Part shown: positions 21,622-46,351 of the stretch, in pieces
Layout: each line of letters starts with the position of its first letter
Position numbering within the stretch: the stretch's first letter is position 1
Origin: Octopus sinensis
Lineage: Eukaryota
Direction: 5' to 3'
Assembly: GCF_006345805.1 (NCBI RefSeq)
Contig: NC_042999.1
Coordinates: 142,352,001 to 142,416,000 of the forward strand
DNA length: 64,000 bases
Made by a program: the position numbers and the translations under genes
The notes under the pieces: generated by a model
What the model saw: the letters and a program-made list of their open reading frames with translations, nothing else
Told to the model about the DNA's origin: nothing
The model's database searches: none

Positions 21622-24600
21622 ATGTGGTTAGGCCAAAATAAATTTATTTCCAGTGGCCCTTTCAGTGCCATTCTTTTAGGAATGGTACTTGGATTACTTC
21701 TAGAGAAATCGAAAGGTACTCTAATGTTTTGTTTATGTTTAATTATTTAAATATTATTACATGATTTATTGTGGAATGTTTTCTGCTAGGCCAGGTCCTT
21801 AACAATAACTTTAAACTTATAAAGTTTTTAATCTGTAATCTCTTAAAACTCAGTTTTTCTAATCCGTATTTATTACATTTATATATCCGATTAAATTCTA
21901 GCATCTCTTCTGGTGATCACATTTTCTCACTCGTGTTTGACAAATTAAGTGTTTGTAGGACAATGATGGATTAGACTAGAAAATATAAACACGAATTACG
22001 CGGGATTGCCATGAGAAGTGACGACTAACGTTTCGATCAAGGACTTTAACAAAAAACTTTCATCTTATATATTACTACTTCTCAGTACACACCCAACTTT
22101 TGATTATGTCTTTTAGAAAAATAAATTTGCCAAGTTCCTTTTAAACTGTCTAATTCTAGCTCTATATGATAAAGCTACATAGAACGCACCTTGTGGCGGT
22201 TGTCGTGATGCATTGGCCAACAAGTTCCGGTATAACCCTTCATAATGCCCGGCAGTGTTGGCATACCCCGTGTGTAAGATGACGGGATAATATAGAGCAG
22301 ACAATAGACATTCAAAAGAGTTCAAATCCCACTGGGATTAACTTCGACTTTAATCTTTCCGGAGAGAATGAAATATTGATTTCAAATTTTGGCACAAGGC
22401 CAGCAATTTCAGGGGAGTGGGTAAGTCGATTACATCGACTTCAATACTCAACTGGTACTTATTTTATTGATCCCGAAAAAAAAAAAAAAGGCAAAGTCGA
22501 CTTCAGCGGACTTTGAACTCGGAATGTAAAGATGGAAGAAATAACACTAAACATTTTGCCCGGCCACCATGAAGTGAATAAAATTACTATCTGTGAAGTA
22601 TTGGAGTCAAGAAAATCGACTTTTCCCTCCCACAAAATTTCTGACCTGGTGCCTATGCAAGAAATCAATTTAATTTCATGTTACATTTTTAATGAGGTGA
22701 ATAAACTTAGACCGATCTTCTAGGCACCGTCTCAATTGATAATCTTGAGCGAAATTTGTTTTTGGTTATAAACTTTGCTGAATACCTTTTTCACAGCGTT
22801 AAGTAGATGAGAACAACAAAAGGTTCCCAAAACATTTTCTAGACACGAGTTTAGTTGGTTGTGATTACTTCAAAATTCCAGTATTTTTACAAACCTCTTG
22901 TACCATCGGTATTTCTCTTGCATACCCCTTATGGAGAATCTGGTATATATAAGCGTACCCATCCACCTCTGACTTTGTTTCATCGTAACTTTCAGGAAAA
23001 TGAATATTTCTACGAATGAAATTATCTACGAATACATTTCAGACTGAGTAGATTACGATTACATTGGAACTTATTGAGAAAACATTTTTCTATTGAGTAG
23101 GGAAGTTTGTTCCCTCATAACTGTCAGAAAAATTGATCAGATGGCTAGATTACGGTTCTGTCAGAATTCAATGAGAAACAACAACAAAAAATTGGTGAGC
23201 GGACATACATACGTACTGATACGCATCACATGTATATCTACAAAATGAACTATGAAATCGTAACTTAATCATCTGAATGGTATATGTAGAAAATTTCATT
23301 TAAAAATATCTATTTTTCTGAAAGTTACGAGGGAACAAATGTCGGTTAATATAGGGCGTAACAAATATCAGAAAATCAAAAAAAAAATGTGTGTAATAGG
23401 TGTAAAACAACTTCCTATGAACGAATATGAAAAAAAAAATTCGCGCACGCGAAAGGGGGGTGGGGGAGAGGCCTCGGAAAATTCACATCGGGAAGTTCCG
23501 AAAGCGTCTGAGGGGCTGACCCGGGCACCAAAACAAAAAAAAAAATAGTGTAATATGTGTAAAACAACTTGCTCTAAACGAATATGAAAAAAAAATGCGC
23601 TCTCGCGAAAGAGGGGTGGGGGAGAGGCCTCGGAATATTTATATCGGGAATTTCCGAAAGCGTCTGAACCGGGCACAAAAACAAAAACAAAAACAGCTTG
23701 CTCTAAACGACTATCATGAAAAAAATGCGCGCTCGCGAAAGGGGGGTGGGGGAGAGGCTTCGGAAATTTCACATCTTCAGTCCACGGCCTTTAAACTAAG
23801 AAAAAATAGTGTAATTGGTGTAAAACTACTTGTTCTAAACGAGTATCAAGAACACACACTCACACATGAATCATAAACTCCGTATTTCGCAAAAAAAAAA
23901 TAAAGAGAAGAAATTCTGGAAAAAGTGAAGAAATGTTGGATCTCCGCCATGTGAATCAAAATACGTGTCAGAAACATCTTGAAATACTACAGAAATTATG
24001 TTACGAAAATGATAATGTATACATACCTCTTTGAGTGGTCCATCGATAATGATGATAAAGAAATGAGTTGGATTTGAACTCAGAATATTGACTAACACAA
24101 CTACATACTACAAGACTCAAAATATTCAGCCAAGTCACCACCCTTAACTAGCAATAATAATAACATCAATAACATAACAGCCAAAAGATTTATTTGTTCT
24201 GAAAATAACAATCATAGTAAATAAATATGTTCTTTAATATTCACATTCATGTGCACTGCAAATTATAAAGATAATTAATTGCTTTACTAAACAGTGTTGT
24301 AAAGGTGAAAGAATAAATTTGGGAAAAAAATACACGCCAAAACTAATTAATAAAGGATAATTAGGGAAGGATTGACACAAAATAATAATTTTTTCTGTCT
24401 CTTTTTTTTCTGATAAATGCATCTTAATAAGTGAAAAGAATTGCATATATCTGAACTATTTCAAAGAAAAGCATAAATTTAATGTTTAAAATAGCTTTAA
24501 CCAAGGAATGAGATCCAACATTTCTTCACTTTTTCCAGAATTTCTTCTCTTTATTTTTTTTTTTGCGAAATACGGAGTTTATGATTCATGTGTGAGTGTG

Positions 24601-27600: not shown

Positions 27601-29594
27601 GTGTGTGTTAACTGCAAATGCAGACTTCAGTTTTTGTCTACTAATATTGCAGAATTCCATGCATAATGGACATTATGATTTTGGGGCCTAAATTCTCTCA
27701 TAATACCTTGTTCAATATACACTGTTGAACAATTTCTACAAGAGTAGATGATCTGCTATAGTCTAGTGTATTTTTAATATTTCATTTTATGTAAAACATA
27801 TTGATATATAATAAAACCAATAAAGCTTTATTAATAAAAGTGGATGGTAGAACTTAGCAGCTTTACACCCTGTACTACATTTACCCCTAATTTTGCCTTT
27901 AATGATTTTGTCTTCTACATGAAATTTTACAGTAATTGTAGTTAAGGTGATATGCGATTGTTTGGTGCAGTAATAAGATAGGGATTGAATAAAAGTTTAT
28001 ATTAAATACTTACGGTGATTAGGTATTATCACATAAGCATCCTTGTGAGTTGTACTTGGAATTACTCCATGTCCTATTTACTGTGGAAGTCTGTTTCTTA
28101 TTTAGTGTATAATGTTCAGTATATTATTTTCAAGTAAGAATTTGTATCTATTTTAATCACATTTGATTTAGCACACATTCATTAAAATATGATATTAATT
28201 TTATATTTTACACATCTTCAGCACACACTGTTTTAATGCCATTGTTCTGTAGAATGGTTGGTGTTAGGAAGGGCATCCAGCTGTAGAAACCAAGCTAAAA
28301 GGGACTATGGAACCTGATGTGGCTCTTGACCTTGTCAGCTTGCATCAAACCGTCCAACTCATACCAGCATGGAAAATGGATGTTAAATCATGATGATGAT
28401 GACAATGTTATATATATGAAATTGCTGAGCAGACATCTAAATATTAAATCGAAACAAAACAAAAATATCTTTGCAGTGTTTGATCCAGAGATTGTCCAGA
28501 AGCAGATGTTGTTTGAGAACTTTGTGATGTTAAAGTTTTTCCTCTCCACTTTGGCAACAGGTAAGACAAACAGAAAAATTATCTCACTATATTTCAATAT
28601 ACCCTTCTCTCTTTCTCTCCCCCACTCTCTCATACACACAATACTACATTTAATATCCTTTCCCTTACTTCACAACTGCTGCCATTTTCCTCTTTATTGT
28701 TATTATAATTATCATCACCATTACCAGTGTTTTGTGCTAAGATGTAATCAGCTAAAAACCCATCATAGGATATAGATTCCCCACTCTTCCACGTTCAATC
28801 AACCTTTGTATCATTACATGCCTAATGATTATAATTTTTAATACACCTATTCTGTATTAAGATATAATGTTATACAAAGATGGACCATATCTGTACATGA
28901 ACAATATTAAAATAAAATTTAGGTTGAGTTCTTAGAAGGAGGGAGAGAGAGAGAGTGTGTGTGTGTATGTGTTTGCGAGTGGACATTAAATGTTGATGAT
29001 ATATAAATAAATATATATATATAGACACATACATACATATATATGTATCTGAATGTTTCATTTGGTGGTGTTAGTGCAATAATATGAGCAAATAGTTAAA
29101 TAATACACTAAACACCAAGTATGTTTATTCTAAGTGAAATCTTTCTTGCTCCCTATTTCACTTATGAGGGATTTTAACCAAGAATTAATTTATAGCAATA
29201 GTTTCACATATACATAATTAAGTAACTCCTTTAAAGGATTTTCATAATTGTTGTAATGATGATATTTGGCTATATTTCAGGCATGTTTCTCTGCTCAATT
29301 GCAAGCATGCTTCAAGGACATGGTGGAGCTGTTGAAAATACCTTGATCTACTATTCTGCTAATCTGATTGATCAATCCTACTTGTGTGGCATTCTTGGAG
29401 GGATGTTTATGGGAGCTGGTGTGGCATGTGCTGGTGCTGTAAGTCTCTAAAATCTCGATAATAACACTGTCTTTTATCTTTTTCTTGTTTTAATCATTGA
29501 AGAGTTTACTCGAACAAATCTTGGTACTTACTCTATCTCTTTTGCTGAAATACCAAGTTACAAGGACATACACAAAGTAGAGCAGTGGGGTGAT

Positions 29595-29632
<38 letters not shown>

Positions 29633-32600
29633 ATATGTGCTTCAACACAGTTTCCACCTACCAAATTGCCCAGGGTTCTAGTAGAAGACACTTGCTCTAG
29701 GTGTCATGTGATAGGATTGAACCCAAAACCTTTTGTGGCTGCAAAGTGAAATTCTTAACAATACAGTCATGCCTGTACCTATGAAAAATACAGTCATGCC
29801 TGTACCTATGAAAAACAGATTTTTTTAAAAGTTATCTTTTAAAGTATTAATGATCTTTGTAGAAGAATGTATTGAGATAGATAAATTTTTTTTATATGGT
29901 TTTGAGATGAAATCCTACCTTGATCAACTTAGCTTTCTTAACATCAGTTGTCACTTTTGTTAGCATCAGTTGATCATTGATCATGTAAATCTGTGCTCAA
30001 AGTCATTCAATTACTTATCATAATAGCTTACCTTTTTCTGTCAGTGTATCTAGAAATACATTATCCAATGTGTCCTTTCTTTTCTAAATTGTGAACAGTG
30101 GACCAAATTTAGGTCATATTAAATATCTAGCCCATTGCTGTGTCATATATGCCTGTGTCAAGTAAATTGTGAGAGAGCATCTTCCTGGTCACTTAACCTG
30201 CTAGAAATAGAAATAAAAATCTTCTTTAAATCACACCTTATTGCCTTATAAAATGACTTATTGGATAATGTAATCATAGATACACTACCTGGCAATAAGA
30301 TGAGATGAAATCAGAACATAAGGGACCAGAACAAATAACACAAGGTATTCTGTTCAAGGCCCAAAAGATTCTACCAATCCAACATCCTATAACAATAACA
30401 GTAACAAACTAACAAATTAAGACAGGAAACTAATTTCATTTTATCTTTTCACATTTTCTCCAGTGTCCTGTTTCTATGTTTGTTCAACTGGGTTCAGGTG
30501 TACCCCATGCTCTTTATGTATTCCTTGGGGCTTACTGTGGCACAGTTTTATATGATGTTATTCCTCCTCTTGCTGCTAAAAGTAAAACATCCAGACAAAC
30601 TTAGTAAGTAACCATATAACATTTTCTAAGACTTTTGTTGTCTTTGTATCATTTCTTTACTTGCATTAGTTTTAGGACAGACAGGCTTCCAAACAAGAGG
30701 GTAGCAATAATGAGGTAAATTATAATGCAGTTAATTTTTAAGTGGTATATTGTTAGTGCTATATTTTATTTTGAATTGATCGCTGAACTCTATAAAATGG
30801 TAGGAATACCAAGTTTTAGCTGTAAATTAGAGCAGTAAAATAGCAGAATTCAGTGAAACTAGTGATGTTTTACATTGACAAAAAGTTAAACAAATTTTGT
30901 GTTGTGAAGAATAGAATTCTAGAATTTCAGATACTTATCTTTGAGGAGAAAGAAAAATATAGAAATGCAGTAGCTTAGTTCTTAAATCACAAATGAAGAA
31001 GTGAATAAAGAAGAGAGTAGTCAAGGATGGTTAGTGTTGGAAGAGAAGAGAAAAAAACGAGAACTGATGTGAGTAGGTTGTGAGCTAAGCTGTAGGGGTG
31101 GGAGGAAGTAATATAAAAGAGAGGGGTAGAAGAGTTTGTGACAAGATTCAGATCAACTGAAACGAGAGGGAGGTGGTTAGGACCAGGTCAAATGAAGTGG
31201 GGGAAGTGAGAAAGCAAAGTGAGATATGGCCAAATGGAAATATATATATATATATATATATACGCACAACACACACACACACACACACACATGGGAGAAG
31301 AAATGAGATGGTAAAGGCAGTTAGCAGAGAAATGAGATCTGTGATCATTACATAATAGTTATTATTACACTTATGATCATTGGTCTGTATGTAAAGAATT
31401 AAATGTTTGTAGAAATGGAGGGAATGATAAAGACAAAATTGTTCAGAGGAGGGATGGACAGATATGTATAAATCTCTGTGACAAGAGAGAAGAAAATGAA
31501 GATGGAAATGATAGACACATCATCATCATCATCTGTTTTTCATGCTGGCATGGGTTGGATAATTTGACAGGAGCCAATGAAGGATTACACCCAAACTCTA
31601 ATGTCTGCTGTGGCATGATTTCTGTGGCTGAATGATCTTATTGCCAACCACTTCACAGACTGTGCTAGGCACATCTTTTTTAGATGGCACTTGCACAAGT
31701 GAGCTCAGCAAATAACTCGTAAGATATGACCCTTCAACTGAGGTGAGTGTAGTGTTGAGTGGGGGTGTATTTATGCAAGGTAATGAAAGTTTAAAGTATG
31801 ATAGAGAGACAGGAACAGGTATCTTGCTGTAGAAATGATACATGGCTACCTTAGTTGGAAAAAAAGAAAAGATGGTAGTGTGTGTCAGGGCATATCCTCA
31901 AGTTACAGGAAAGATTAATATGAGAGAAGTAGTCCAGAGGACTGCACAGGGTAAATAGGTAGGTAAGTTTATTTAGGTAATTATATTTAAAACATTTGTA
32001 TTTCATCCTATTTTGAATTAATTTTATACTTTTTAAAAAATTAATTGGATACAAAAAGTATTTTAGCTAAATAGTTTTGTGTCTCATATTAAGAATCAAA
32101 GAGTAGCATGTGCATTGCAAGACTGAATTTGATCATATGTTATAAATACCTATTTTATATCCATTTAGAAATTATAGTAGAATCACACTTTAAAAAAATA
32201 TTAATTATTTTTTATTGTAGTTTACATTACTCTATGTCGACACCTTACTTCAATGTGGCAATGCCTTTAGCTGTAATCCTGGCGACTGTAACATTTTTCT
32301 TAGAGCTTGATAAGTCTTGGCGGAATGAATATTTGGTAAGTGTCATTGTTACATTGAAATTTAGTGTTACAACTTTTACTCTTGATAGTTTATTCATTTT
32401 TATATTTCTTGGAAAAAAAGTTTTCTCAAAGCTGAACTTTTAATAAAGAATAGCTCCAAAGATAATTTAAATTTATATGAAATATCTTCACAAAGACTAG
32501 CTTTTGATATGGAAATTATAAGCATAAACTATCACATATGCATGTATATAAGTAGTAGTGATAGGTAAGTCTCATTCCTGTATGTATTCATAATATTTTA

Positions 32601-33391: not shown

Positions 33392-33428
<37 letters not shown>

Positions 33429-33547
33429 ATATATACATATATATATGTATGTATGTATGTATATATATACATATATATATGTATGTATGTATGTATATAT
33501 ATACATATATATATGTATGTATATATATATACATATATATGTATGTA

Positions 33548-33609
<62 letters not shown>

Positions 33610-34801: not shown

Positions 34802-34835
<34 letters not shown>

Positions 34836-35957
34836 TGACACCGCGCATTGGGAGATGAGGTTTTAGGCCGCAGAAAGAAGACAAGATTGAGATGAAATGC
34901 TTTGCGGTGGTGTGAATAAGTTTTTGTGAGTGAAAGTTTTTATGCTTCAGCTAGCATTTGAGACGAAAGACAACGATAACGCTATTAGATGGGGATACAA
35001 TAATAATAAGGCTTGCAAAAACAATGAAAAGAGGAAACAGGTCGGGAACTTAGCTTGATGTTTTTCATCCTGCAGTATTGGCTAAGCCTGTGGAAGCGAG
35101 TGAAGTGAGATTATCCGAGAGAGAGAGAGAGAGAGACAGTGAAAACAGAGGGAGAACCGACCCACATAGCGGAGAGAGAGAAGAGAGGAGAGAGAGAGAG
35201 ACATAGTGACACCGCGCATTGGGAGATGAGGTTTTAGGCCGCAGAAAGAAGACAGGATTGAGATGAAATGCTTTGCGGTGGTGTGAATGTGTGTGCGTGT
35301 GTGTGTGTGTGTATTCAAATATGAATTAGAAGCAGCTCAGGTGTTGTAATCAATATAGAACACACAAACACAATGTATGTACTTTGTTGCTTTGTTAGTC
35401 AGATGTGATTTGAAGTGTTGGAGATGGCTCTTAAAGTGCTGGGTGTTAAAACACCTGAAAGTAAGTCATAGACAGGTGAGACAACTCATGCCAAGTTCCA
35501 TTCAGGAGCGATGGCCGTTGATGTTTTGTCCTTTTTGTGACTTTTCAACATCATGTAACTGAACTGAACCTGAGGCAAATTGAATAGCCTGTCTGTGTGT
35601 CTGTGTAAAATGAATCACAATGGCTGGTATGCCTGAACGATGCATACATAGGAATAAATCCAAACGTGAATTAGAAGCAGCTCAAGTGTTGTAAACAATA
35701 TCGAACACATACACAATGTATGTGTTCTGCTAGTTTGCCAGTTGGCTGTGATTTGAAGCACTGGATGTTAAGACATTGATGTCCATCACTCCTGAACAGA
35801 ATTTGGCATGAATTGTCTCACATGTCTATGACTGACTTTCAGTTGTTTTCACACCTGGCACTTTTGAGAGTTATCTCCAATGCCTCAAATTGCAGCTGAT
35901 TGGTGAACTAGCAAAGCACATATATTGTGCATGTGTGTCCAATATGTATGTACGTAC

Positions 35958-35988
<31 letters not shown>

Positions 35989-38900
35989 TGCTTGTATGCA
36001 TGTATACATGCATGTATGTATGTGTGCTTGCACACAAGCATGCACACTCACACACACACACACATGGCCTAGTGGTTAGAGCGGTGGACTCATGGTTGAG
36101 GGATTGCGGGTTCGAATCTCAGACTGGGTGATGTGTGTGTTTATGAGTGAAATACCTAAGCTCCACGTGGCTCTGGCAGAAGGTAATGGCGAACTTCTGC
36201 TGACTCTTTCACCACAACTTTCTCTCACTCTTTCCTCCTGTATCTTGCAGCCCACCTGCGACAGACCGGTGTCCTGTCCAGGTGGGGAACCTATACGCCA
36301 AGAAAACCAGGAAACCGGCCCTTATGAGCCAGGCATGGCTCGAGAAGGAACAAACAACACACACACACGCCAAGCTTCCTCATAGTTTCTGTTTATCAAA
36401 ATTTATCAACATGGTATTTGTTGCCTTAGTGTTGTAGTAGAAAACACTTGCCCAAGGTACCATGGTATCAAGGTTCCAAGGACTGATCCTGAAGCCTGAA
36501 GCCACATGGTTGCAAAGTGGGTAGAATGGAATTCTGCTGAAGTAGCCATCTTTGTTTTTGTACATGATATCACCGAAGTATCTGCATTTGCAATGCAGAT
36601 ATTCATATAGAGTAAATAATGACATGTCTAGCCTACTCTATGTATTCAGACGTTTGCTGGTGTGTGTTTGTGTATGTTAATGTATGCTATGAATTCTAAA
36701 CCCAGAGCAGGTTATCAGTAAATAAGTCACATGTTTTTTTAATAAGATAAACTGCAGATTATTCTGTTTTTACATGCATTTTTGAAAGATCTTTTTGTTA
36801 GTAACACACAAATTTTTAATTCCTAGCCTTGTTGAAAATAGCTGCCACTCCCTCCTCTTACTACTATGAGGAAAAGCCTGATGTTTTAAAAGTGCATAAG
36901 AAAAAAGTACAATATATCACCCATAGACAAAAATAAAAATATACAATATAGATCCAGAAATAGTTTATTTTGAAATATGAAGAAAATGAAATGATAGGCA
37001 GAATATATGAACCATTGAAACTAAAGATATAGATTGTATTTAGATGAGTTTAGTAGCTATTTAGAAATGAAACTTACTGAAAGTTGTAATCAGTTAAGAA
37101 AACTTTGATATATATCTGAAGATTATTAAAAAATGTTGACACATAACTAAACAAATGCTGAATGCTAGACAGAAGTGGTAGCTGAAGTAAGGAGCTAACA
37201 AAGTAGAGCTGGGAGAAAGAACTATGCTCTTGTTTATTTTTACCAAAATATGATCTTTTTCACATTTTTCTTTTACTTGTGTCAGTCATTAGACCGTGGC
37301 CATCCTGGGGCACCACCTTGAAGAATTTTAGTTGATCGAATCATCCCCAATACTTTTTTTTTAAAGCCTGGTGCTTATTCTATTGGTCTCGTTTGCCAAA
37401 CTGCTAAGTTACGGAGACTTGAGCACACCAGCATTGGTTGTCAAGTGCTGGTGGGGTACAAACATATTTAAGAAATGAATCTCATAGTGAGTCTATGTTT
37501 GGGGACAATGAATTTAATGTAGGATAAACTGTCACACTCCAGCCTAAATTAGACCAGGGTGCATAATTAAAATGGAGACAATCCCCAAATTGTCTAGCCA
37601 TTAAGGAAGCTGCTGTGGCTGTTGAAGCTTCTTACTTTATTCAGTCTTTTAGAAATCTTGAACTCAGCATTGCAATCTAATAAAATATTCTTTCATTATA
37701 CGGTGCTCCTACACATTGTAGTAATAAGTGGTATCTATAAATGGTTACTGTTTACAGCTTGGTGGACTTAACTAGTGAAAATTAAGTTTCTTGGCCACAA
37801 ATATTGCCCAGTAACAATGGTGAGACACAGACTGTTTGGCTTCTCAGTAATCCAGCACTTTATTGATTCAGTCATTTGTCACTTCTGTCTTATAAGCAGC
37901 TGGAGTTAACATACTTATTAACAAAAAAGAAAGCTAAATAAAATATAAAGATTATGATGTAACTTTAATGATTTGATATATTATACATTCTTTTTTATTT
38001 AATTAGGTTAGATTTGGTGTTGGAAGCTGGTTATTTGCTCCAGTTTGGTCTCCATATCTCATTGGAATTTCAACTGCCATTTTGCAACTAATTCTTATAG
38101 GATGTTTTAACAAAGTTATCAGTAAGTCTCACCTTTTCTGTTGTATTTATATTTTTTGTTATGATCTTTCATGTTTAAATGAGATATCAGAGTCAATGGC
38201 TTGGAGAGAATGTGGGGTGCTACTCTTGACCTTTACAGGCCCTCCTAGTGTAGTGGGTTTGATATGATTGGTGTTCAGTTTGAATCTCTAAAGGTTGATG
38301 CCTCCAGGAAAATTTAAGCGTGGAGTGTATTTCTGAAGGTCATATTCTGGTTGGAAGGATTGGAAAAATTGTCTGGATGTGGTGAATGAGATACAGTGCT
38401 GTGGGTAAGAGGAATAAAGAGACAGATGTGTCAAATAGGCATAAGGAGTCTGCAGCTAAGCAGTTCCAAGACAGGCAATTATAGTAGCAACAACAGAGAC
38501 AGAGAATGGAAACAGCTCATCTTTTAGTCAGTGGTTGTAGTGTGTTGGTGAGTAAATTTTTGTAAATCAATCAAATGACCTATTTTGGGGTGTAATTTAA
38601 GATGTTTGTGTAACAACATCACTGTTCTAGATATGTTAGCTGTACTCTAATGTAGGTCTTAATAGGTCAGCAATTAATCAGAGTTGAAGTCTTTTATGGC
38701 CTTGAAGTGGCAGATTTATCTCAGATGCAGTTTTGGCAGTTATATATTCAGCTGTGAGGCCTGTTATCCTGACTTTGTTATTCATGTGTAGAGAGTGCAA
38801 GACTGTTTTTCTTGATGGGTGTAGTGATTATGTCTTTATTCTGTTGAAGATTAAGTTGCTAAGTCTTCTTTGGAAGATGTTTGCGGTTTTTGTTTGTGGA

Positions 38901-41900
38901 AGTAGTGTTGTTCTTGCATGAGGTGTCTAGGTTACATCTAAATAGTGCTTGTGAATGAAGGATGCATATTAACGTGAAAAATAGATGCCTGTCCATTTTC
39001 TTGGTTGAAGGATTAGCTTTAAATACAATCCACATTGTGACAAAATATATAATAAAAAGAATTGAATTTGAATAGCTTTCAATATTGAATGATACTGAAA
39101 AATATATACTTGTGTAATAAATATTTATAACAAACTGACACACATTTACAAAGAACAAACAAACAAATACACACTCCCATAATGCAAATAACACACACAA
39201 ACACACACACTCACTCTCTTACATATTTAAATTTCTTTTATAGCAAACAGTGAAGTTTTTACTGTTATCAATAAAACATTGATGAGTATTTTTAAAAAAG
39301 GAAAACTTCCATCAAAGTCTTCTAAAATTTCAACTGAGTACTTCTGGGTGAGTCCTGCTTTTGACATTTAATATAGAAATTATCTACTCTTTAGCTTGGC
39401 AGTTTTCAATTCAGCAAACATCAGACATGTTTTTGTAATTTTAGTTGAATTAGAATGATGAAATTCAAATATTGATTTAAATACTGTATTTTATGTATTG
39501 AGTGCATGAGATGGAGAAGTTGACATAACATTCATTCATACCTTCTTCCATATTATTAACAATGGAATAAATGTTGTTGTTTAGCTCCAAGTTATACCTA
39601 AGTAAGCTAACCTCTGATTGATATTTTTACGGGCATAATGTATCCAAGATTACATTATTCAATGTGTCCTTCCTTTTTTTTAAGATGTTAGGATGTTATT
39701 TGTGGAGACTTAGCTGCTATTTTGAGCAAGTTGTGCAAACACATAGAGGCTTTCTCATTTGGTATCTTCTTATCATTGGTTATATTATATGAATGAAAAC
39801 CTTTCCACTCTGTGCATATACTAAATATCCCTTCCACCAAAAGCACTGGTGCTGGCACCATGTAAAAAGCACCCAGTACACTTTATAAAGTGGTTGGCAT
39901 TAGGAAGAACATCCAGCTGTAAAAACAATGCCAAACAGACAATGGAACTTGGTATGGCTCCTGGCTTTGCCAGCTCCTCTCAAACTGTCCACCCTGTGCT
40001 AGTATGGAAAATGAATGTTAAATGATGATGATGAAGACGACAATAGTTATTGTCATAATTGAGGTAAAGAAGCTATGTTGACCATTGGTTATAAACTATC
40101 TAACCCAGTGAAATGTAGTGGTTCTATGTGGAAATTGAGATGGGTTGGCCCACTCTATCCACCAGGAACTTGCCTCCACAAAAGGTATGGCTATTTGGTT
40201 AAGAAGCTTGCTTCCCAACCACACGATTTCAGTTTCAGTTTTACAGTTTGGTACCTTGGGCAAGAGTCTTCTACTATAATCCTAGGCTGACCAAAAGCAT
40301 GTCAGTGGATTTGCTCCATGGAAACTGAAAGAAGCCTATTGGCTGTGTGTTTTGCTTTGTCTTGATATTACATGGCAAGTTGTGAGTGTCACTGTCATTC
40401 ATTTCCAATATTCTATAGAAACATGTCTGGCCATAGGGAAATATTTCCTTTCTTGGAAACAGGTGAGGGCCAGTGACAGGAAGGGTATCTGGCTGTAGAA
40501 AGTCTGCCTCGATAAATTCTGTCCAACCCATGTAGGCAGTGGGAAGTGGGCATTAAAACAATGATGGTAATGATGATGATGATATTGTTTCACCAGGCAT
40601 ATGATGTATTTTTGTTGTGAATTGATTTCTTTTAATCATGGAAATGTTAATGACTAGCATGAATTTGGATGAAACTAATGACTGTTAAAATACCATTATT
40701 TTTACTAATCATAAAAATATTTTAACTAGTACACTACCATTTTTTCCAACTCTGATAGTCTTTATATTATTAGTATAAGATCTTGGAGAAACCAGATGGC
40801 TTAATGGTTAGAGTATTCAGCTATTGATTGTAAGGTTGTGAGTTCAGTTCCCAGCAGCTTGTTGCATCCTTGAACAAGACACTTTATTTCTCATTGCTCC
40901 AGTTCACTCAGTTGGCAAAATTGAGCTGTACCTGCAATTCAAAGGGCCAGCCTTTTCACATTCTGTGTCACACTGAATCTCCCTGAGAACTATGTTAAGA
41001 GTATGTGTGTCTGTGGAGCACTCAGCCACTTGCATGCTAATTTCACAAGCAGGTTGTTCCATTGATCAAATCAACTGGAATCATCAAATTTGTAATTGAC
41101 GGAGAGCCAGTATTAGATCATCCAGTAATCATGTTGTAGTTCTAACTTTAACTATTGTATTCTATCTTAATCTATAGTAATAACTCACCATATTATTTCT
41201 ATTCTGCAATAATTTTCAGATATTTTTTAGTCTTGGAGTAATACTTGGAGCTTACTTTTCATCATTTCATTCATATAATTATGAATATAGTCAAGTTACA
41301 AGAAACCAAGCCTTTGTTGGTGGTGTTCTAGTATCTTGGGGATCAAAGATGGCTGCAGGATGTTACATGTAAGTATAGTTATATTTATCTTATATTACAA
41401 CATGTGACCAAAGCATTGTTGGTTATGAGTTTCTGTTGGACGAACCACAGATTCACTGCATTTACAATGGCATCAGTGACCAGAGTTGTTGTTATAATTT
41501 GGGTGATAAAATACCATTAAGAGTTTTTGTCTCTAAGCATTGGTTATCAGTTGTTCTTAATATTTACATCTTTTGCTGAAATACACATATACACATGTAT
41601 GCACACCCCTTTAATTTTTACATCTGTTTTTCCATGCTAGCGTGGGGTAGATGAATATATTATTGCAACATTGTTTTATAGCTGAATGCTTGTTCTGTCA
41701 CTAACCCTGTGAATGATTTGTTGAAGGAGATATGAGAACATCAACACTTGTAGCTCAGCAATTTTCAAAGAACACAAATGTAAATATATATATATATATA
41801 TATATACTAGCAGTATCGCCCGGCATTGCTCAGGTTTGTAAGGGAAATAACTATATAAGCATTTTTAGAGAGTTACTTCCCTTATAGATGCCAATTCGAG

Positions 41901-44900
41901 CTTTCTTAACCATTTCTGTTTTGGTGTCTTCAAGCCATGAAGTCGTTGTTCTAAAAGAACGCTGGTCTCCTTGACAACGCTTTACGACGTTGATTTCCTT
42001 ACACTCCCTTCCCCACAGCTTCACGAGGGAGGGAAGAAGGGGGAGAAGCAAACAGGTGCAGGTGTGACCATGGACTCCAACTCCGCCGCCATCGACACAC
42101 GAAAAATTATGCATTAAAATGGAATAAAAAATGATGTTAAATTATTTTTAAAATCGTAGACGCGCGCTAATACTCAGACGGGCTTGATATTAATCACGAC
42201 TATAAGATACCCGGTTTTGGTTAAACTGCACCGCAAAATGTGGGAGTAGTTAGGAATCTAAATCGAAGGGGACAGACACTCACACAACTACAGTTTTATA
42301 TATATAGATATACACAGTGGCGGCCAAAATGTTCAGAATGGCATTGTTTTCGTCAGAAAAGTAGATATAATTTTTTATCAAAGTTGTTTTATATTCTATA
42401 ATTTTCACAGACAATAAATACGATATTATTTGTTATTGCCTGAGATTTTGGTGTAATTTGAGAGGATAATACAAAAGTTATGGATGATTTAGTGATTTAC
42501 TGCAAAACCCATGGTGGCTAAAATGATCAGAACGGTTGCTTTTACTCTGTGTTTTAGTATATTTAACTGGCGAACTCTAATGTTTTGAATTTGTTTACGT
42601 GACAGTTCGTTTACTAAACATTAGTAAGAATATTTGCATTGTACTTTGTTAATATAATGCCACTTACTCCGTTACCAATTCGTCGGCAGATTATTAAACT
42701 TCGAAGGAAGGATAATTTAAGTATTGGATCTATTGCAAAGATTGTTAACAAGTCAAAAAGTGTTGTACACGGTATTCTTAAGGTCTACGATGATTGTGGT
42801 TTGTGTGAAGCAAGAAAGTTTACAGGTAGGCCAAGAAAAACGACCAAGAGAGAAGATCGTGCTATGGTAAAGTTGGTTATAAAGGACAGATTTAAAACTG
42901 CTGCTGCTGTTTCTCGGAAAATGAGCATTGTATTGAAGAAAACTTTATCTCGAAAAACTGTGTCTCGTCGTTTAGTTGAACATGACCTACAAGCAAGAGC
43001 ACCTGCAGTGAAGCCACTGATCAGCTCCAAGAATAAAGTGTCGTCTTACCATTGCAACCAAAAATGTGTTGTGGTCGCAAGAAAAATGGCAAACGGTGCA
43101 TTTCAGTGATGAATCTAAGTTTATGTTATTTGGCTCAGATGGGGAAAGGTACGGTCGTAGAAAAGTAGGTGAAAAATTGTCGCCTAAATGCCTTAAGACT
43201 AGTGTTAAATTCGGTGGAGGAAGTGTCATGGTTTGGGGGATGATATCTGGAGATGGTGTGGGCCCTTTGGTGCGATTACATGGAAAGGTAAATGCAGGAG
43301 TTTATAAACAACTTGTAAAAGATCATGTCTTGCCTGTGCTGAGAAATTCAACTAAGCGACCACCCATATTCATGCAGGACAATGCCCCATGTCACAAGGC
43401 TAAGGTGGTCATGAACTTCCTCAAGGCTGAAAAGGTTATTGTTATGGATTGGCCTGCTCAAAGCCCAGATCTCAATCATATTGAAAATGTATGGAATATT
43501 CTAGAACGGTCGAAAGCCAGAAATCCTAAAACAACTGAGCAATTATGGAATGCCCTTCAGGAAGAATGGAATAAGATCACCCAGCAAGAAATTGAAAATT
43601 TAGTTTCCTCATGCAGTCAAAGATGTCAGAGTGTGATTGAAGCTAAAGGGCTTCACACTAAATATTAAATAATTCCAGTATTCTCTGTCATTTTTTATTA
43701 TTTTGTTGTTTTTTCAACCGTTCTGATCATTTTGGCTGCCATGGGTTTTGCAGTAAATCACTAAATCATCTATAACTTTTGTATTATCCTCTCAAATTAC
43801 ACCAAAATCTCAGACAATAACAATTAATATTGTATTTATTGTCTGTGAAAATTATAGAATATAAAACTACTTTGATAAAAAATTATATCTACTTTTCTGA
43901 CGAAAACAATGCCGTTTTGAACATTTTGGCTGCAACTGTATATATATATATATATATATATATAATTTAATTTAATTTATGCAGTGTTTAAGATAAGAGC
44001 TATTAATAGCTTCTTGCCACTGAGTCATTGAGATTAAGCAGATTTATATAACATGCCTTGTGTCTCTTCATGGCCACTCTTGCACCCATTTCCAGGTAAG
44101 AAATGCTTCTTTATATAAACAGCTGTTAAGCGTTTATGGTTGATCAACTTCTGCTGCTGTGGCTGCTCTCTATGTTTTTACCATTAACACCACCACTACT
44201 ACTACAACAATAACATTCTGTTACTGATTTGTTGTCTCTGCATTCAGTCTTGTCAGAGTAAGTTGATGTTTATGCGATGCCTTATTCAAGGAGTGAAGAG
44301 TAGATATGTTGAGAAAAAGAATTTTTTAAATATTTTATATTCTAATTATAGTGTCCTGTGTTACAGGTTTTCAATGAGAACTTTTTTTTTATATTCTATA
44401 TTCTAATTATAGTTTCCTGTGTTACAGGTTTTCAATGAGAACTTTTTTTTTATATTCTATATTCTAATTATAGTTTCCTGTGTTACAGGTTTTCAATGAG
44501 AACATTTTTTTATATTTTATATTCTAATTATAGTGTCCTGTGTTACAGGTTTTCACTGGTTCACTGCACTTATGACAAGAGTAACTAAGGAATGTCACCA
44601 ATTTTTCCTGTTTCATACATACACACACCAATTATAGAGGGAGCCATTATGTTTTCCATATCAGTTTATGATTGCTAAAATTTATAGTTATTGCTTCCCT
44701 GTTCTTATAAACATATCATCATCATCATTTAACATCCATTGTCCATGCTGGCATGGGTGGGACAGTTTGACCAGGGCTGGTAAGCTGGAAGGCTGCACCA
44801 GACTCCACTCTGATTTGGCATGGTTCTCTACAGCTGAATGCCAACCACTCCAAGAATGTATTGGGTGCTTTTATGTGCCACCAGCACAGGTGCCATTTGC

Positions 44901-46351
44901 ATGACACCGGTATCTGCCACAACTGCAATTTTGCTTGGCTTGAAGGTCTTCTTCTCAAGCATGACATAATACCAAAGTTCTCGCTCATTGCCTCTGTGAG
45001 GCCCAACACTTGAAGGGAACTCAGCCACTTTACCTCCATGAAGCCTAATGCTTAAAAGGAACTTGGCCACTGTGCCTCCATGAGGCCTAATGCTCAAAAG
45101 GAACTCAGTCACTTTGCCTCCATGAGGCCTAATGCTCAGAAGGAACTCGGCCACTTTGCCTCCATGAAGCCCAACACTTGAAAGGAACACATATAAAAGA
45201 AAATATGTGTGTGTGTATTATATGTATATATTCTATATATCATCATCATCACTGTTGTTTTAACATCTACTATTCTTGTTTGCATGGGTCAGATGGAATT
45301 TGTTGAGATGGATTTTCTACAGTTTGATGCCCCTGCTGGGCTTCTTTTAGTTTGTGGCCTGTGGCTAGAGTAGAAGATACTTGTTCAAGTCCAACATGCA
45401 GTGGGACTGAACTCAAAGCCATGTTGTTGGAAAGCAAACTTCATATATACCGGGCTGACATGAAATTTCATTATTTCTTTAAGTTTGAATGTTTAACAGT
45501 AGGAAGGACATCTGGTAGTAGTTATCCAAAATACAAAATCTGTATAAGACATTCTTCCTATTTCTTATTATTTTGATGTTTTTCAATACAAATAATAATT
45601 TATTTGACCCTCAGAAAAAATGCCTTATAACATTTGTTCTGATTCTTTACTTGCTGAGTTCAAATCCTGCCAAGGTTAACTTTACCTTTCATCTTTCGAG
45701 GTTGTGGACTACTGCCTCCTTCTGCTAAGACCCTTTTCCTCCTCCTCCTCCTACAATAACAACAACAAACATTGGGGAAAAGCATAGCTCTCCAACCTGT
45801 TAGATCCCAGCCAAACAACCTACCCATGCTACATTGTAAGCAAATTTAAAAATAACGAAATGGATGTGCTTTCACACTCATGAAACTTTTAAGCAATGTA
45901 TAAGTCAACCCTTCCTGCACATATATTCTTTTCTACTCTAGGCACAAGGCTTGAAATTTTTGGGGAGGGAGCCAGTCGATTAGATTGACCCAGTATGCAA
46001 CTGGTACTTAACTTATCCACCCTCAAAAGGATGAAAGGCAAAGTCGACCTCAGCGCAGAATGTAAAGACTTCCCCCACATATACTGTAGCATGATGCAGT
46101 CCTTGAACGCATTAGATTCTGTCAAACCATTCAACCCAAACCAGTTTGAAACATATATGTTAAAAGATGATGATGATGATATATGTAAAACAAAAATTGC
46201 ACCTCAACATGTTAAAGTAATTCTAAATTTTTCTACTTGCAGTGGTCATGGCATATCTGGTATAATGCTTCTCTCCAAATTATCATTTGCCGTTGTTCCA
46301 GCTCTGTGGGCTGGTGGTTTTATTGCCACATCACTTCTACAATATTTTTAA
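21622..46351 (+). CDS. YeeE/YedE (TsuA-like, Sulf_transp) family multi-pass membrane protein, putative thiosulfate/sulfur-compound transporter, 9 exons, 355 aa
   Basis: Exons, all GT-AG and phase-consistent: 21622-21715 (MWLGQ...[14 protein letters not shown]), 28477-28560 ([28 protein letters not shown]), 29281-29438 (GMFLCS...[17 protein letters not shown]), 30464-30603 ([12 protein letters not shown]...[10 protein letters not shown]...), 32221-32335 (...[12 protein letters not shown]), 38007-38121 (...VWSPYLIG...LQLIL), 39244-39347 (least certain), 41220-41368 ([12 protein letters not shown]...[19 protein letters not shown]), 46243-46351 ([16 protein letters not shown]...WAGG...stop). Total 1068 nt. 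Two GG-x-x-x-G-x-G-x-x-x-A-[GA]-[GA]-C motifs and GCxxGHG are YeeE/YedE hallmarks. Confidence 0.85.
23344..25124. mobile_element. Non-autonomous foldback DNA transposon with about 600-bp terminal inverted arms and an 8-bp TSD
   Basis: Arms 23344-23944 and 24510-25124 are near-perfect reverse complements. Termini are GGTTAATATAGGGCG...CGCCCTATATTAACC. CAAATGTC flanks both ends (23336-23343 and 25125-25132). The spacer is 565 bp with no recognisable transposase. Confidence 0.9.
33320..33605. repeat. Compound (TA)n/(TATG)n microsatellite; similar tracts at 6925-7030, 26765-26842 and 35946-36015
   Basis: Visible directly in the sequence. It explains the Y/I/M/V-rich spurious ORFs in the ORF track. 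Confidence 0.95.
34447..35287. repeat. About 370-390-bp tandem repeat, about 2.2 copies, with (GA)n tracts
   Basis: CCGCGCATTGGG recurs at about 34449, 34841 and 35211. The long intervening blocks are nearly identical. Confidence 0.9.
36064..36358 (+). mobile_element. tRNA-derived SINE
   Basis: A-box TGGCCTAGTGG and B-box GGTTCGAATCTC followed by a non-tRNA body and an AAC-rich tail. A more decayed tRNA-headed SINE lies at about 40796-41110. Confidence 0.75.
38170..38530 (-). mobile_element. Old CR1/Jockey-like LINE 3' relic; similar relics at about 3240-3530 and 13300-13500
   Basis: Minus-strand remnants resemble YYN.CS.EL...RT.LY..SFF...W..LP, but are heavily mutated. Confidence 0.45.
41806..42309 (+). 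mobile_element. Helitron/Helentron-associated non-autonomous element (HINE/DINE-like)
   Basis: 5' end TATACTAGCAGTATCGCCCGGCATTGCTC. 3' end ...CAGACACTCACAC...CAGTTTTATATATATAGAT. Both resemble recalled DINE-like termini. No ORF. Confidence 0.55.
42315..43938 (+). mobile_element. Tc1-family DNA transposon (DD34E), IR/DR type, full length (1624 bp), transposase frameshifted
   Basis: 224-bp TIRs at 42315-42538 and 43715-43938 begin CAGT. The right flank is TA, the left is CA within a TA-rich tract. Transposase runs from ATG 42657 (HTH region, GRPRKT) to stop 43668 and contains [20 protein letters not shown] and [12 protein letters not shown]; there are 34 residues between D and E. One frameshift lies near 43036. 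Confidence 0.95.
44330..44555. repeat. About 61-bp tandem repeat, about 3.7 copies
   Basis: TCTAATTATAG...TGTGTTACAGGTTTTCA recurs at 44341, 44402, 44463 and 44523. Confidence 0.9.
44998..45188. repeat. 39-bp minisatellite, about 5 copies, at the end of a SINE-like repeat
   Basis: Unit approximates GAGGCCTAATGCTCAAAAGGAACTCAGCCACTTTGCCTCCAT. Confidence 0.8.

What the first reader, a model, noticed from the sequence alone, without database searches (positions are those of the whole stretch)
21622..46351. Spliced animal homologue of the bacterial YeeE/YedE (TsuA) thiosulfate transporter
Seen in the sequence: nine GT-AG exons, not recovered as a gene by the ORF track, join in phase into a 355-aa hydrophobic protein. 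It carries both internal-repeat motifs of the family: [16 protein letters not shown] (Cys113) and [20 protein letters not shown] (Cys318). Established: YeeE/TsuA imports thiosulfate in bacteria through a relay of conserved cysteines and works with the TusA-like sulfurtransferase YeeD/TsuB. I know of no vertebrate member and no functionally characterised animal member. Inference: the eight introns full of host repeats show this is a resident nuclear gene and not bacterial contamination. It may be an undescribed animal route for thiosulfate or reduced-sulfur transport, for example export of the product of mitochondrial sulfide oxidation, or Se/S-compound handling in a benthic animal.
Basis: partly seen in the sequence, partly recalled or inferred. 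Interest (0 to 1): 0.85.

Follow-up and report, generated by a model that had tools for sequence, protein, structure and literature searches.

The report
Octopus YeeE-family sulfur channel gene
This is a real, intact, nine-exon octopus gene for a membrane channel of the bacterial YeeE/YedE sulfur-transport family, but the same gene model is already in RefSeq under that name, relatives occur across many eukaryotes, and it looks more like a fused two-cysteine bacterial system than the thiosulfate importer TsuA.

Summary
Nine + strand exons (21622-46351), all with GT-AG introns, splice in phase into a 355-aa protein carrying Cys113 (GACP) and Cys318 (GCYIGHG). The protein hits Pfam PF04143 end to end (104 bits). 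A confident AlphaFold model (pLDDT 89) matches only the S. thermophila YeeE structures (TM 0.64-0.72). The gene has identical exon lengths in O. vulgaris and Argonauta, dN/dS of about 0.3, conserved synteny, and a spliced mRNA in cuttlefish, so it is a resident, constrained nuclear gene.

It is not new. The product is identical to RefSeq XP_029634435.1, [quoted passage not shown]. Orthologues in abalone, scallop, echinoderms and sponges are already named "thiosulfate transporter TsuA-like". The family also occurs in ichthyosporeans, fungi and protists.

It is not a TsuA orthologue. It scores about 30 bits against NCBIfam cut-offs of 350-645. The third cysteine (Cys22) and the YeeD/TsuB-contact residues are absent. 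Its nearest prokaryotic relatives are split two-gene pairs (DUF6691 + YeeE/YedE) in ArsR/BigR-type operons, some with rhodanese, MBL-fold or TauE genes.

The best inference is a fused, partner-independent, two-cysteine channel for a reduced inorganic sulfur species. Substrate, direction and location are untested.

The parts
21622..21715 (+). Exon 1 (ATG; residues 1-31 plus the first base of codon 32). It encodes TM1 and the start of the 'LLEKSKVFDP' motif.
   Evidence: donor AAAG|GTACTC; 94 nt in all three cephalopods
28477..28560 (+). Exon 2 (84 nt). It contains Phe33 (28479-28481), the position aligned to the third relay cysteine (Cys22) of S. thermophila YeeE.
   Evidence: acceptor TTTGCAG|TG
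29281..29438 (+). Exon 3 (158 nt). It ends with ...[14 protein letters not shown], the helix that leads to the first central cysteine.
   Evidence: donor GCT|GTAAGT
30464..30603 (+). Exon 4 (140 nt). It starts with TGT, which encodes Cys113 (30464-30466) in the GACP motif, equivalent to StYeeE Cys91. It also holds Q120 and S123, in place of the YeeD-contact residues R98 and E101.
   Evidence: Cys113 invariant in 48 sequences
32221..32335 (+). Exon 5 (115 nt). It encodes the central helix (residues about 168-189) and the 'LE..WRNE' motif shared with the 197-aa bacterial subunit.
38007..38121 (+). Exon 6 (115 nt). It marks the start of the C-terminal repeat, with the 'VWSPYLIG' motif shared with the 173-aa bacterial subunit.
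39244..39347 (+). Exon 7 (104 nt).
   Evidence: donor CTGG|GTGAGT
41220..41368 (+). Exon 8 (149 nt). It contains Cys318 (41361-41363) in GSKMAAGCY, equivalent to StYeeE Cys293.
   Evidence: Cys318 invariant
46243..46351 (+). Exon 9 (109 nt including the TAA stop). It encodes ...IGHGISG and the last TM helix.
42639..43668 (+). Decayed Tc1/mariner-type transposase remnant inside intron 8 (an HTH_Tnp_Tc3_2 ORF and a DDE_3 ORF in different frames). It is host repeat content and not part of the protein.

Best explanation
The locus is the Octopus sinensis orthologue of a eukaryote-wide subfamily of the YeeE/YedE (PF04143, COG2391) membrane proteins. The product is a single polypeptide with nine TM helices. 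Its two homologous halves correspond to two separate bacterial subunits. One is a protein of about 197 aa annotated 'DUF6691', with the motifs ALEKSRVFEP...GACPG. The other is a protein of about 173 aa annotated 'YeeE/YedE', with W.PYL.G...GGCTSGHG.

Shown: family membership, the YeeE fold, conservation of the two central cysteines (Cys113 and Cys318), absence of the TsuA-specific third cysteine and of the TsuB-contact residues, and purifying selection.

Inferred: it acts as a passive, partner-independent channel or relay. A small reduced inorganic sulfur species would pass through the hourglass pore by transient interaction with the two cysteines. Candidate substrates are sulfane/zero-valent sulfur or persulfide, thiosulfate, or possibly sulfite. 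This matches what is described for YeeE Cys91/Cys293 and for the two essential cysteines of the YedE1E2 heterodimer. The physiological role is most likely sulfur homeostasis or sulfide detoxification, by analogy with the ArsR/BigR-regulated rhodanese, persulfide-dioxygenase and TauE operons that hold the nearest bacterial relatives. Substrate, direction and membrane are not established.
For: Gene model and identity: (exact match to XP_029634435.1).

Family: PF04143 at 1.3e-29, 104 bits, profile positions 7-310 of 310.

Fold: pLDDT 89.3, pTM 0.90. Foldseek against the PDB gives only 6LEO, 8K1R, 6LEP and 8J4C as significant matches, with TM 0.64-0.72 and probability 1.0; the next best has TM below 0.2.

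Cysteines: C113 aligns with StYeeE C91 and C318 with C293. Both are invariant in the 48-sequence eukaryotic alignment. Cys91 and Cys293 are reported as indispensable (PMC11582611).

Not TsuA: Phe33 sits at the Cys22 position, and Q39, Q120 and S123 sit at R28, R98 and E101. NCBIfam scores are 28-32 bits against cut-offs of 350-645.

Nearest prokaryotes are split pairs: 60 of 62 BLASTP alignments from proteins of 230 aa or less fall on residues 28-195 at 30-36% identity. The adjacent 173-aa gene carries the C-half motifs. The octopus N-half scores 89.6 bits on the 197-aa subunit against 14.8 on E. coli TsuA, and the C-half 36 against 19. The eukaryote profile scores 168 + 138 bits on the pair against 66 on TsuA and 36 + 47 on the short YedE1E2-size pair. 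An NJ tree joins the eukaryotes and this pair at 90% bootstrap.

Bacterial contexts: an ArsR-type regulator, the two subunits and a YgaP-like TM protein; ArsR, rhodanese and two pairs in Cupriavidus; ArsR, TauE, an MBL-fold hydrolase and a pair in Hymenobacter. Literature: YedE1E2 imports zero-valent sulfur and both cysteines are essential (PMC10812762); a BigR-regulated yeeE-yedE-pdo2 detoxification operon is described (PMC7315123).

Constraint: identical exon lengths, intact ORFs, and dN/dS of 0.29-0.31 at dS of about 0.65 between Octopus and Argonauta. The cuttlefish mRNA is collinear across all eight junction positions in four SRA runs.
Against: No functional data exist for any eukaryotic member, as far as my searches go. 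Substrate and direction are inferred only from bacterial relatives at about 30-35% identity.

Cephalopods are the most divergent members of the eukaryotic clade. They have GCYIGHG instead of GCTSGHG, they lack the 'YCT' cysteine found in most other eukaryotes, and the model has pLDDT below 50 at residues 319-322. Their substrate may therefore have shifted.

dN/dS of about 0.3 is only moderate constraint. Operon context does not transfer to a eukaryotic gene. The octopus neighbour is a zinc-transporter-type gene, not a sulfur-metabolism gene.

The similarity to the experimentally characterised short YedE1E2-size pair is weak (36 + 47 bits). No O. sinensis transcript data were available to me.
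Confidence: 0.6

Rival explanations
1. One reading: an animal TsuA/YeeE-type thiosulfate importer that uses a three-cysteine relay and hands thiosulfate to a TusA-like (YeeD/TsuB) sulfurtransferase.
For: It has the same fold and shares the two central cysteines. RefSeq automatic names say 'YeeE' or 'TsuA-like'. Thiosulfate is a plausible substrate for any member of the family.
Against: The position aligned to Cys22 is Phe33, and is Val or Phe across the eukaryotic clade. The YeeD-contact residues R28, R98 and E101 align to Q39, Q120 and S123, and E261 falls in an insertion with no octopus counterpart. The NCBIfam TsuA equivalog models score 27.8 and 31.9 bits against cut-offs of 645 and 400. 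E. coli TsuA is a much poorer match than the split pairs. There is no TsuB-like ORF in the window (best tblastn E = 0.83).
Confidence: 0.12
2. A YedE/FdhT-type selenium-handling membrane protein that supplies Se for selenoprotein synthesis.
For: There is a weak hit to NCBIfam selen_YedE_FdhT (27.9 bits). A YedE-like protein takes part in selenium transport in Methanococcus (PMC11582611). Selenium and sulfur chemistry are similar.
Against: The score is far below the 350-bit cut-off, and the hit places octopus residues 16-142 on profile positions 219-332, which reflects internal-repeat similarity only. No YedF-like partner and no selenium-linked context was seen. The nearest relatives sit in sulfur-detoxification contexts.
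Confidence: 0.05
3. A YeeE-fold protein whose role in cephalopods has drifted away from inorganic sulfur transport, for example to another small anion, or to sensing in the way SoxT1B works.
For: Cephalopods form a long branch, with altered residues next to Cys318 (GCYIGHG), loss of the 'YCT' cysteine, and dN/dS of about 0.3. SoxT1B shows that family members can act in signalling rather than bulk transport. The conserved head-to-head neighbour is a cation-efflux gene.
Against: Both pore cysteines and the surrounding glycine-rich motifs are strictly retained. The whole nine-TM architecture is predicted with high confidence.
Confidence: 0.18
4. An artefact: bacterial contamination, a recent lateral transfer into cephalopods, or a decaying pseudogene.
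For: The family is mostly prokaryotic, and the nearest prokaryotic relatives are alphaproteobacterial.
Against: The gene has eight spliceosomal introns with identical exon lengths in three cephalopod genomes. The flanking Cation_efflux gene is conserved. The ORFs are intact and dN/dS is well below 1. The best hits are other animals, holozoans, fungi and protists. Cephalopods nest among eukaryotes in the tree. A cuttlefish mRNA exists.
Confidence: 0.02

Closest known systems
RefSeq XP_029634435.1, 'UPF0394 inner membrane protein YeeE isoform X1' (Octopus sinensis), with orthologues CAI9720221.1 (O. vulgaris), XP_014774291.1 (O. bimaculoides) and the Argonauta hians protein P0002
   Same: It is identical in sequence to the window's spliced product. 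The orthologues have the same nine-exon structure, and the two with genomic DNA available (O. vulgaris, Argonauta) share the same neighbours.
   Different: Nothing differs: this is the same gene. The public name is an automatic similarity-based label and not a tested function.
Eukaryotic 'thiosulfate transporter TsuA-like' or 'Sulphur transport domain-containing' proteins (Haliotis, Pecten, Asterias, Apostichopus, Diadema, Amphiura, Oscarella, Corticium, Sphaeroforma, chytrids, Ascomycota, Goniomonas, Chrysophaeum)
   Same: They are collinear over the full length at 28-35% identity. They share the motifs EK.RVFEP, SGACPG and GGC..GHG.SG, the two invariant cysteines, and the lack of a Cys22 equivalent.
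   Different: Cephalopods are divergent: GCYIGHG instead of GCTSGHG, TNSEVFTV instead of GGSS.YCT, and no long N-terminal tail. None of these proteins has been characterised, as far as my searches show.
Split 'long' bacterial pair: a DUF6691-type subunit of about 197 aa plus a YeeE/YedE-type subunit of about 173 aa (alphaproteobacterial-like metagenome locus L003; relatives in Rhodopseudomonas, Variibacter and Hyphomicrobiaceae)
   Same: This is the best prokaryotic match to each half (profile scores 168 and 138 bits; 32-36% identity to the octopus N-half). Each half has one cysteine at the same positions. The central helix and the 'PWR.E' motif are also shared.
   Different: It consists of two polypeptides, and the gene order (C-type then N-type) is the reverse of the eukaryotic domain order. 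It sits in an operon with an ArsR-type regulator and a YgaP-like TM protein. It is itself uncharacterised.
YedE1E2 / PmpAB (Cupriavidus pinatubonensis, Sinorhizobium meliloti, Serratia sp. ATCC 39006): a zero-valent-sulfur importer
   Same: It uses the same two-cysteine logic, with one essential cysteine per half corresponding to Cys91 and Cys293. It has no third cysteine, and no TsuB-type partner is described for it in the papers I read. It is linked to persulfide dioxygenase and to BigR/ArsR regulators.
   Different: It is a heterodimer of four-TM subunits of about 135 aa without the central helix. Similarity is weak: the eukaryote profile scores 36 + 47 bits on a short pair of this size. 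The direction shown experimentally is import only.
TsuA/YeeE of Spirochaeta thermophila and E. coli (PDB 6LEO, 8K1R): a thiosulfate importer that works with TsuB/YeeD
   Same: It has the same fold (TM 0.64-0.72), nine TM helices in a single chain, and two central cysteines at equivalent positions.
   Different: Structural-alignment identity is 16-18%, and E. coli TsuA scores only 66 bits against the eukaryote profile. The octopus protein lacks Cys22 and the YeeD-interface residues R28, R98 and E101, and it fails the NCBIfam equivalog cut-offs.

Membership tests
YeeE/YedE superfamily (Pfam PF04143 Sulf_transp; COG2391) | A match to the family HMM above the gathering score, covering the whole domain | tested here: met
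   104.2 bits against a cut-off of 27, E = 1.3e-29, residues 35-347 on profile positions 7-310 of 310
YeeE/YedE superfamily (Pfam PF04143 Sulf_transp; COG2391) | The YeeE fold: nine TM helices with two pseudo-symmetric halves and short central half-helices | tested here: met
   AlphaFold model with pLDDT 89.3 and pTM 0.90. Foldseek hits only the YeeE entries, with TM 0.64-0.72 and probability 1.0.
YeeE/YedE superfamily (Pfam PF04143 Sulf_transp; COG2391) | Conserved central cysteines equivalent to StYeeE Cys91 and Cys293 | tested here: met
   Cys113 and Cys318 align to Cys91 and Cys293. Both are invariant across 48 eukaryotic sequences.
TsuA (thiosulfate utilisation transporter; NCBIfam NF041049 / NF052577) | A score at or above the curated equivalog cut-off | tested here: not met
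   27.8 bits against 645, and 31.9 bits against 400
TsuA (thiosulfate utilisation transporter; NCBIfam NF041049 / NF052577) | The third conserved cysteine (StYeeE Cys22), which faces YeeD Cys17 | tested here: not met
   It aligns to Phe33. The position is Val or Phe across the eukaryotic clade, within the EK.RVFEP motif.
TsuA (thiosulfate utilisation transporter; NCBIfam NF041049 / NF052577) | The conserved cytoplasmic YeeD-contact residues R28, R98, E101 and E261 | tested here: not met
   These align to Q39, Q120 and S123, and E261 lies in a StYeeE insertion with no counterpart (alignment; residues listed in PMC11073785)
TsuA (thiosulfate utilisation transporter; NCBIfam NF041049 / NF052577) | A dedicated TusA-like partner (TsuB/YeeD) | tested here: inconclusive
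   There is no TsuB-like ORF in the 64-kb window (best tblastn E = 0.83). However, adjacency is not expected in a eukaryote, and the rest of the genome was not searched.
TsuA (thiosulfate utilisation transporter; NCBIfam NF041049 / NF052577) | Thiosulfate uptake activity | not testable with these tools
   This needs complementation or a liposome assay.
YedE/FdhT selenium-metabolism membrane protein (NCBIfam NF033796) | A score at or above the curated cut-off | tested here: not met
   27.9 bits against 350, and the match is out of register (residues 16-142 on profile positions 219-332)
Split two-cysteine systems (DUF6691 + YeeE/YedE pairs; YedE1E2/PmpAB) | One conserved cysteine per half and no third cysteine | tested here: met
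   Only Cys113 and Cys318 are conserved. The other cysteines (64, 95, 109, 137, 230) vary among cephalopods.
Split two-cysteine systems (DUF6691 + YeeE/YedE pairs; YedE1E2/PmpAB) | Two separate subunits of about 130-200 aa encoded by adjacent genes | tested here: not met
   The octopus protein is a single 355-aa chain whose halves match the two subunits. It is therefore a fused derivative or relative, not a member in the strict sense.
Split two-cysteine systems (DUF6691 + YeeE/YedE pairs; YedE1E2/PmpAB) | Closest sequence relationship among prokaryotic YeeE/YedE proteins | tested here: met
   Profile scores are 168 + 138 bits on the long alphaproteobacterial-like pair, 93 + 79 on Hymenobacter, 73 + 90 on the long Cupriavidus pair, 36 + 47 on the short pair, and 66 on TsuA. 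The NJ clade has 90% bootstrap.
Split two-cysteine systems (DUF6691 + YeeE/YedE pairs; YedE1E2/PmpAB) | Zero-valent sulfur import that depends on both cysteines | not testable with these tools
   This was shown only for CpYedE1E2 and SmYedE1E2 (PMC10812762).

The most novel reading that the evidence does not exclude
The pan-eukaryotic fused two-cysteine YeeE-family protein, of which this octopus gene is a divergent member, may be the missing membrane pathway for a reduced sulfur species (persulfide/sulfane sulfur, thiosulfate or sulfite) in the sulfide-tolerance physiology of marine invertebrates, fungi and protists. It may have been inherited from an alphaproteobacterial split-gene system, and so possibly from the mitochondrial ancestor, and then lost in vertebrates. 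No eukaryotic member appears to have been studied experimentally.
Probability: 0.3. Interest if true: 0.6.

Novelty: already known. Interest (0 to 1): 0.3.

Why it matters
As an annotation, nothing here is new. The gene, its splicing and its YeeE-family label are already in RefSeq, and the existence of eukaryotic YeeE-like proteins is stated in the literature.

The part that could matter is functional. No eukaryotic member seems to have been tested. Meanwhile, how sulfane sulfur, thiosulfate or sulfite cross membranes during animal sulfide detoxification is poorly defined.

This analysis sharpens the hypothesis that should be tested. The automatic label 'TsuA-like thiosulfate importer' is probably misleading. 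The eukaryotic clade lacks the TsuB-dependent third cysteine. It is instead a fusion of a two-subunit, two-cysteine bacterial system that sits in ArsR/BigR-type operons, some with rhodanese, MBL-fold or TauE genes.

Tried and rejected

(2) A six-term literature query was too loose and returned nothing relevant. 'UPF0394' found only bacterial papers.

(3) No DNA was on record for O. bimaculoides isoform X2 or for the Rhodopseudomonas half-protein P0233.

(4) I tried to retrieve the characterised S. meliloti pSymA YedE1E2 from the plasmid collection with the 173-aa subunit as query. pSymA was not among the 40 of 41 records listed at E <= 1e-3. I used a Cupriavidus campinensis short pair of the same size as a proxy, so the comparison with characterised YedE1E2 is indirect.

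(5) Mitochondrial targeting was considered. The octopus N-terminus is too short, and most animal N-terminal tails are acidic and low-complexity, which is unlike presequences. Pecten and Oscarella are ambiguous. I treat this as not supported rather than excluded.

(6) Exon-finding for the flanking genes by cross-species tblastn gave hits on both strands, which reflects DNA-level conservation. It located conserved blocks but did not give clean gene models. ORFs 7492-7836 and 60300-61016 had no Pfam hit.

(7) The animal-only profile search added few taxa because of the word-index limit. Absence from vertebrates is therefore unproven.

Full report
OBSERVATION. On the + strand the two motif cores are present but split by introns. 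Mapping the database protein P0001 onto the window gave nine collinear blocks at 82-100% identity over the aligned stretches, with the mismatches confined to read-through past the exon boundaries. A boundary search restricted to GT/AG then gave a unique in-phase model. The exons are 21622-21715, 28477-28560, 29281-29438, 30464-30603, 32221-32335, 38007-38121, 39244-39347, 41220-41368 and 46243-46351. The CDS is 1068 nt and encodes 355 aa. Every acceptor is preceded by a pyrimidine tract, and six of the eight donors are GTAAGT. Cys113 is the first codon of exon 4 (30464-30466) and Cys318 lies at 41361-41363. The mechanical ORF list recovers only fragments. The introns hold microsatellites, minisatellites and a decayed Tc1/mariner copy.

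IDENTITY OF THE GENE. The spliced product is identical to XP_029634435.1, [quoted passage not shown]. The window is therefore O. sinensis, and the model is already public. A second RefSeq isoform (314 aa) starts at Met42 and lacks exon 1. The O. vulgaris protein differs at three residues.

The O. vulgaris and Argonauta hians loci were retrieved. Both have the same nine exon lengths (94/84/158/140/115/115/104/149/109), all-canonical splice sites and intact ORFs. Both also have the same upstream, divergently oriented Cation_efflux (PF01545) gene. Nei-Gojobori dN/dS is 0.29-0.31 between Octopus and Argonauta at dS 0.64-0.67. It is 0.15 between the window and O. vulgaris at dS 0.025. The cuttlefish orthologue occurs as an identical, uninterrupted 1086-nt ORF on contigs of 1.4-1.5 kb from four SRA runs. 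It is collinear with the octopus protein over residues 20-352, so it spans all eight junction positions. Contamination and pseudogene readings are excluded.

FAMILY AND FOLD. Pfam PF04143 matches end to end (104 bits). Sequence search of the PDB finds only S. thermophila YeeE (E about 1e-3). An AlphaFold model built from a 48-sequence alignment is confident (pLDDT 89.3, pTM 0.90). Foldseek returns only the four YeeE/TsuA entries as significant, with TM 0.64-0.72 and probability 1.0, and all other hits have TM below 0.2. In the alignment to StYeeE, Cys113 pairs with Cys91 and Cys318 with Cys293. These are the two cysteines reported as indispensable (PMC11582611).

WHY IT IS NOT TsuA. Three lines of evidence argue against orthology.
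- StYeeE Cys22, the "third cysteine" that faces Cys17 of YeeD/TsuB, aligns to Phe33.
- The YeeD-contact residues R28, R98 and E101 align to Q39, Q120 and S123, and E261 has no counterpart (alignment; residue roles from PMC11073785).
- The NCBIfam equivalog models for TsuA and for YedE/FdhT score 28-32 bits against cut-offs of 350-645.

DISTRIBUTION. An exhaustive phmmer search of 1.84 billion representatives found 986 relatives at E <= 1e-3, of which 33 had E <= 1e-30. Every one of the top hits that carries a name is eukaryotic. They are:
- molluscs: cuttlefish, Haliotis ("thiosulfate transporter TsuA-like") and Pecten ("UPF0394 inner membrane protein YeeE-like");
- echinoderms: sea cucumbers, sea urchins, starfish and a brittle star;
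- sponges: the homoscleromorphs Oscarella and Corticium;
- ichthyosporeans: Sphaeroforma and Amoebidium;
- other eukaryotes: chytrids, many Ascomycota, Goniomonas and a pelagophyte.

No chordate appeared among the named hits, but the named sample is small and the word-indexed searches are not exhaustive. The clade has its own signature, with EK.RVFEP, SGACPG, GGSS.YCT and GGCTSGHG.SG. Within it, Cys113 and Cys318 are invariant in the 48-sequence alignment. Cephalopods are the divergent members (GCYIGHG, no YCT cysteine). A 2024 paper already states that YeeE-like proteins occur in eukaryotes. I found no paper on a eukaryotic member.

NEAREST PROKARYOTES AND MECHANISM. The prokaryotic hits are half-size proteins. 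60 of 62 BLASTP alignments from hits of 230 aa or less fall on octopus residues 28-195 at 30-36% identity. These hits carry "ALEKSRVFEP...AGACPGT...PWR.E". In a metagenomic locus, the gene next to one such 197-aa protein encodes a 173-aa protein with the C-half motifs (AWSPYVAG...NWWQV...GCTSGHGLSG). The two genes are flanked by an ArsR-type regulator and a YgaP-like TM protein.

The octopus N-half scores 89.6 bits on the 197-aa subunit against 14.8 on E. coli TsuA. The C-half scores 36 against 19. The eukaryote profile scores 168 + 138 bits on the pair, 66 on TsuA and 36 + 47 on a short pair of 145 + 145 aa. An NJ tree (100 bootstraps) joins the eukaryotes and the pair at 90%. Cephalopods form a 100% clade nested among animals and protists. 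That tree is rough: it uses NJ, includes only one alphaproteobacterial pair, and the cephalopod branch is long.

Annotated plasmid contexts of related pairs show two arrangements. Cupriavidus has ArsR/SmtB, a rhodanese, and 'YeeE/YedE' plus 'DUF6691' genes. Hymenobacter has ArsR, TauE, MBL-fold hydrolases and a pair. This matches the published BigR-regulated yeeE-yedE-pdo2 detoxification operon (PMC7315123). It also matches the YedE1E2 zero-valent-sulfur importer, whose two cysteines are both essential (PMC10812762).

I therefore read the octopus protein as a fused, two-cysteine, partner-independent channel for a reduced inorganic sulfur species. Fold, cysteines and relationships are shown. 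Substrate, direction, membrane and physiological role are inferred. Octopus has no presequence-like N-terminus, and most animal homologues carry acidic, low-complexity N-terminal tails. A mitochondrial location is therefore not supported, though it is not excluded.

VERDICT. The gene is real and conserved, but it is already annotated under the YeeE name and belongs to a widespread eukaryotic family, so it is not a discovery. The useful refinement is that the 'TsuA-like' label probably misdescribes the mechanism. The remaining value lies in the complete lack of functional data for any eukaryotic member.

Noticed in passing
window 21216-21320 (minus strand) and upstream to about 7500; L001 1-9684; L002 1-9719: A Cation_efflux (PF01545, ZnT/SLC30-like) gene of 431-432 aa lies head to head with the YeeE-family gene. 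Its 5' end is about 300 bp from the YeeE-family ATG. The arrangement and the 21216-21320 block (88-91% amino-acid identity to Argonauta) are conserved between Octopus and Argonauta, which suggests a shared bidirectional promoter.
   Followed up: partly
window 42639-43668 (+), inside intron 8: A decayed Tc1/mariner-type transposon. An HTH_Tnp_Tc3_2 ORF (42639-43109) and a DDE_3 ORF (43066-43668) overlap in different frames, so the transposase is frameshifted.
   Followed up: partly
window 23378-23667 and 24680-25090, intron 1: Two minisatellite arrays with a period of about 156-157 nt. Their consensus units are reverse complements of each other, so they form an inverted pair of tandem arrays about 1 kb apart.
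   Followed up: no
window 33320-33606 and 35943-36023 (intron 5); 26764-26840 (intron 1): Long (TATA/TATG)n and (TTTG)n microsatellites. The one at 33320-33606 produces spurious ORFs of over 120 aa on both strands in the mechanical ORF list.
   Followed up: no
RefSeq isoforms: P0277 (O. sinensis X2, 314 aa), P0276 (O. vulgaris, 314 aa), P0003 (O. bimaculoides X2, 338 aa): Alternative products are annotated. A 314-aa form starts at Met42 and lacks exon 1 and TM1. An O. bimaculoides form is frameshifted after residue 273 and lacks the Cys318 motif. Both would be expected to be non-functional as channels.
   Followed up: no
P0007 (Phlyctochytrium planicorne, 689 aa): This chytrid protein is a tandem duplication of the whole nine-TM unit in one polypeptide. 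The two copies are each other's closest relatives in the tree.
   Followed up: partly
L007 (Cupriavidus campinensis plasmid NZ_CP043439.1) 660-6097: One ArsR-headed cluster carries a multicopper oxidase, a short YeeE/YedE + DUF6691 pair (144 + 144 aa), a rhodanese, and a long pair (175 + 199 aa). Two size classes of split YeeE-family systems therefore coexist side by side.
   Followed up: partly
window 51924-52067, 54483-54728 and 60300-61016 (minus strand): These are conserved minus-strand coding blocks of the downstream gene (79-90% amino-acid identity to Argonauta for the first two) and a 238-aa ORF. The ORF has no Pfam match, and the look-up of encoding contigs listings for the O. vulgaris and Argonauta loci show no Pfam family for the gene's product.
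   Followed up: partly
Diadema antillarum / D. setosum proteins P0012, P0027, P0278: Sea urchins carry several paralogues (355, 462 and 540 aa) with long, acidic, low-complexity N-terminal extensions. The family has therefore expanded in some echinoderms.
   Followed up: no
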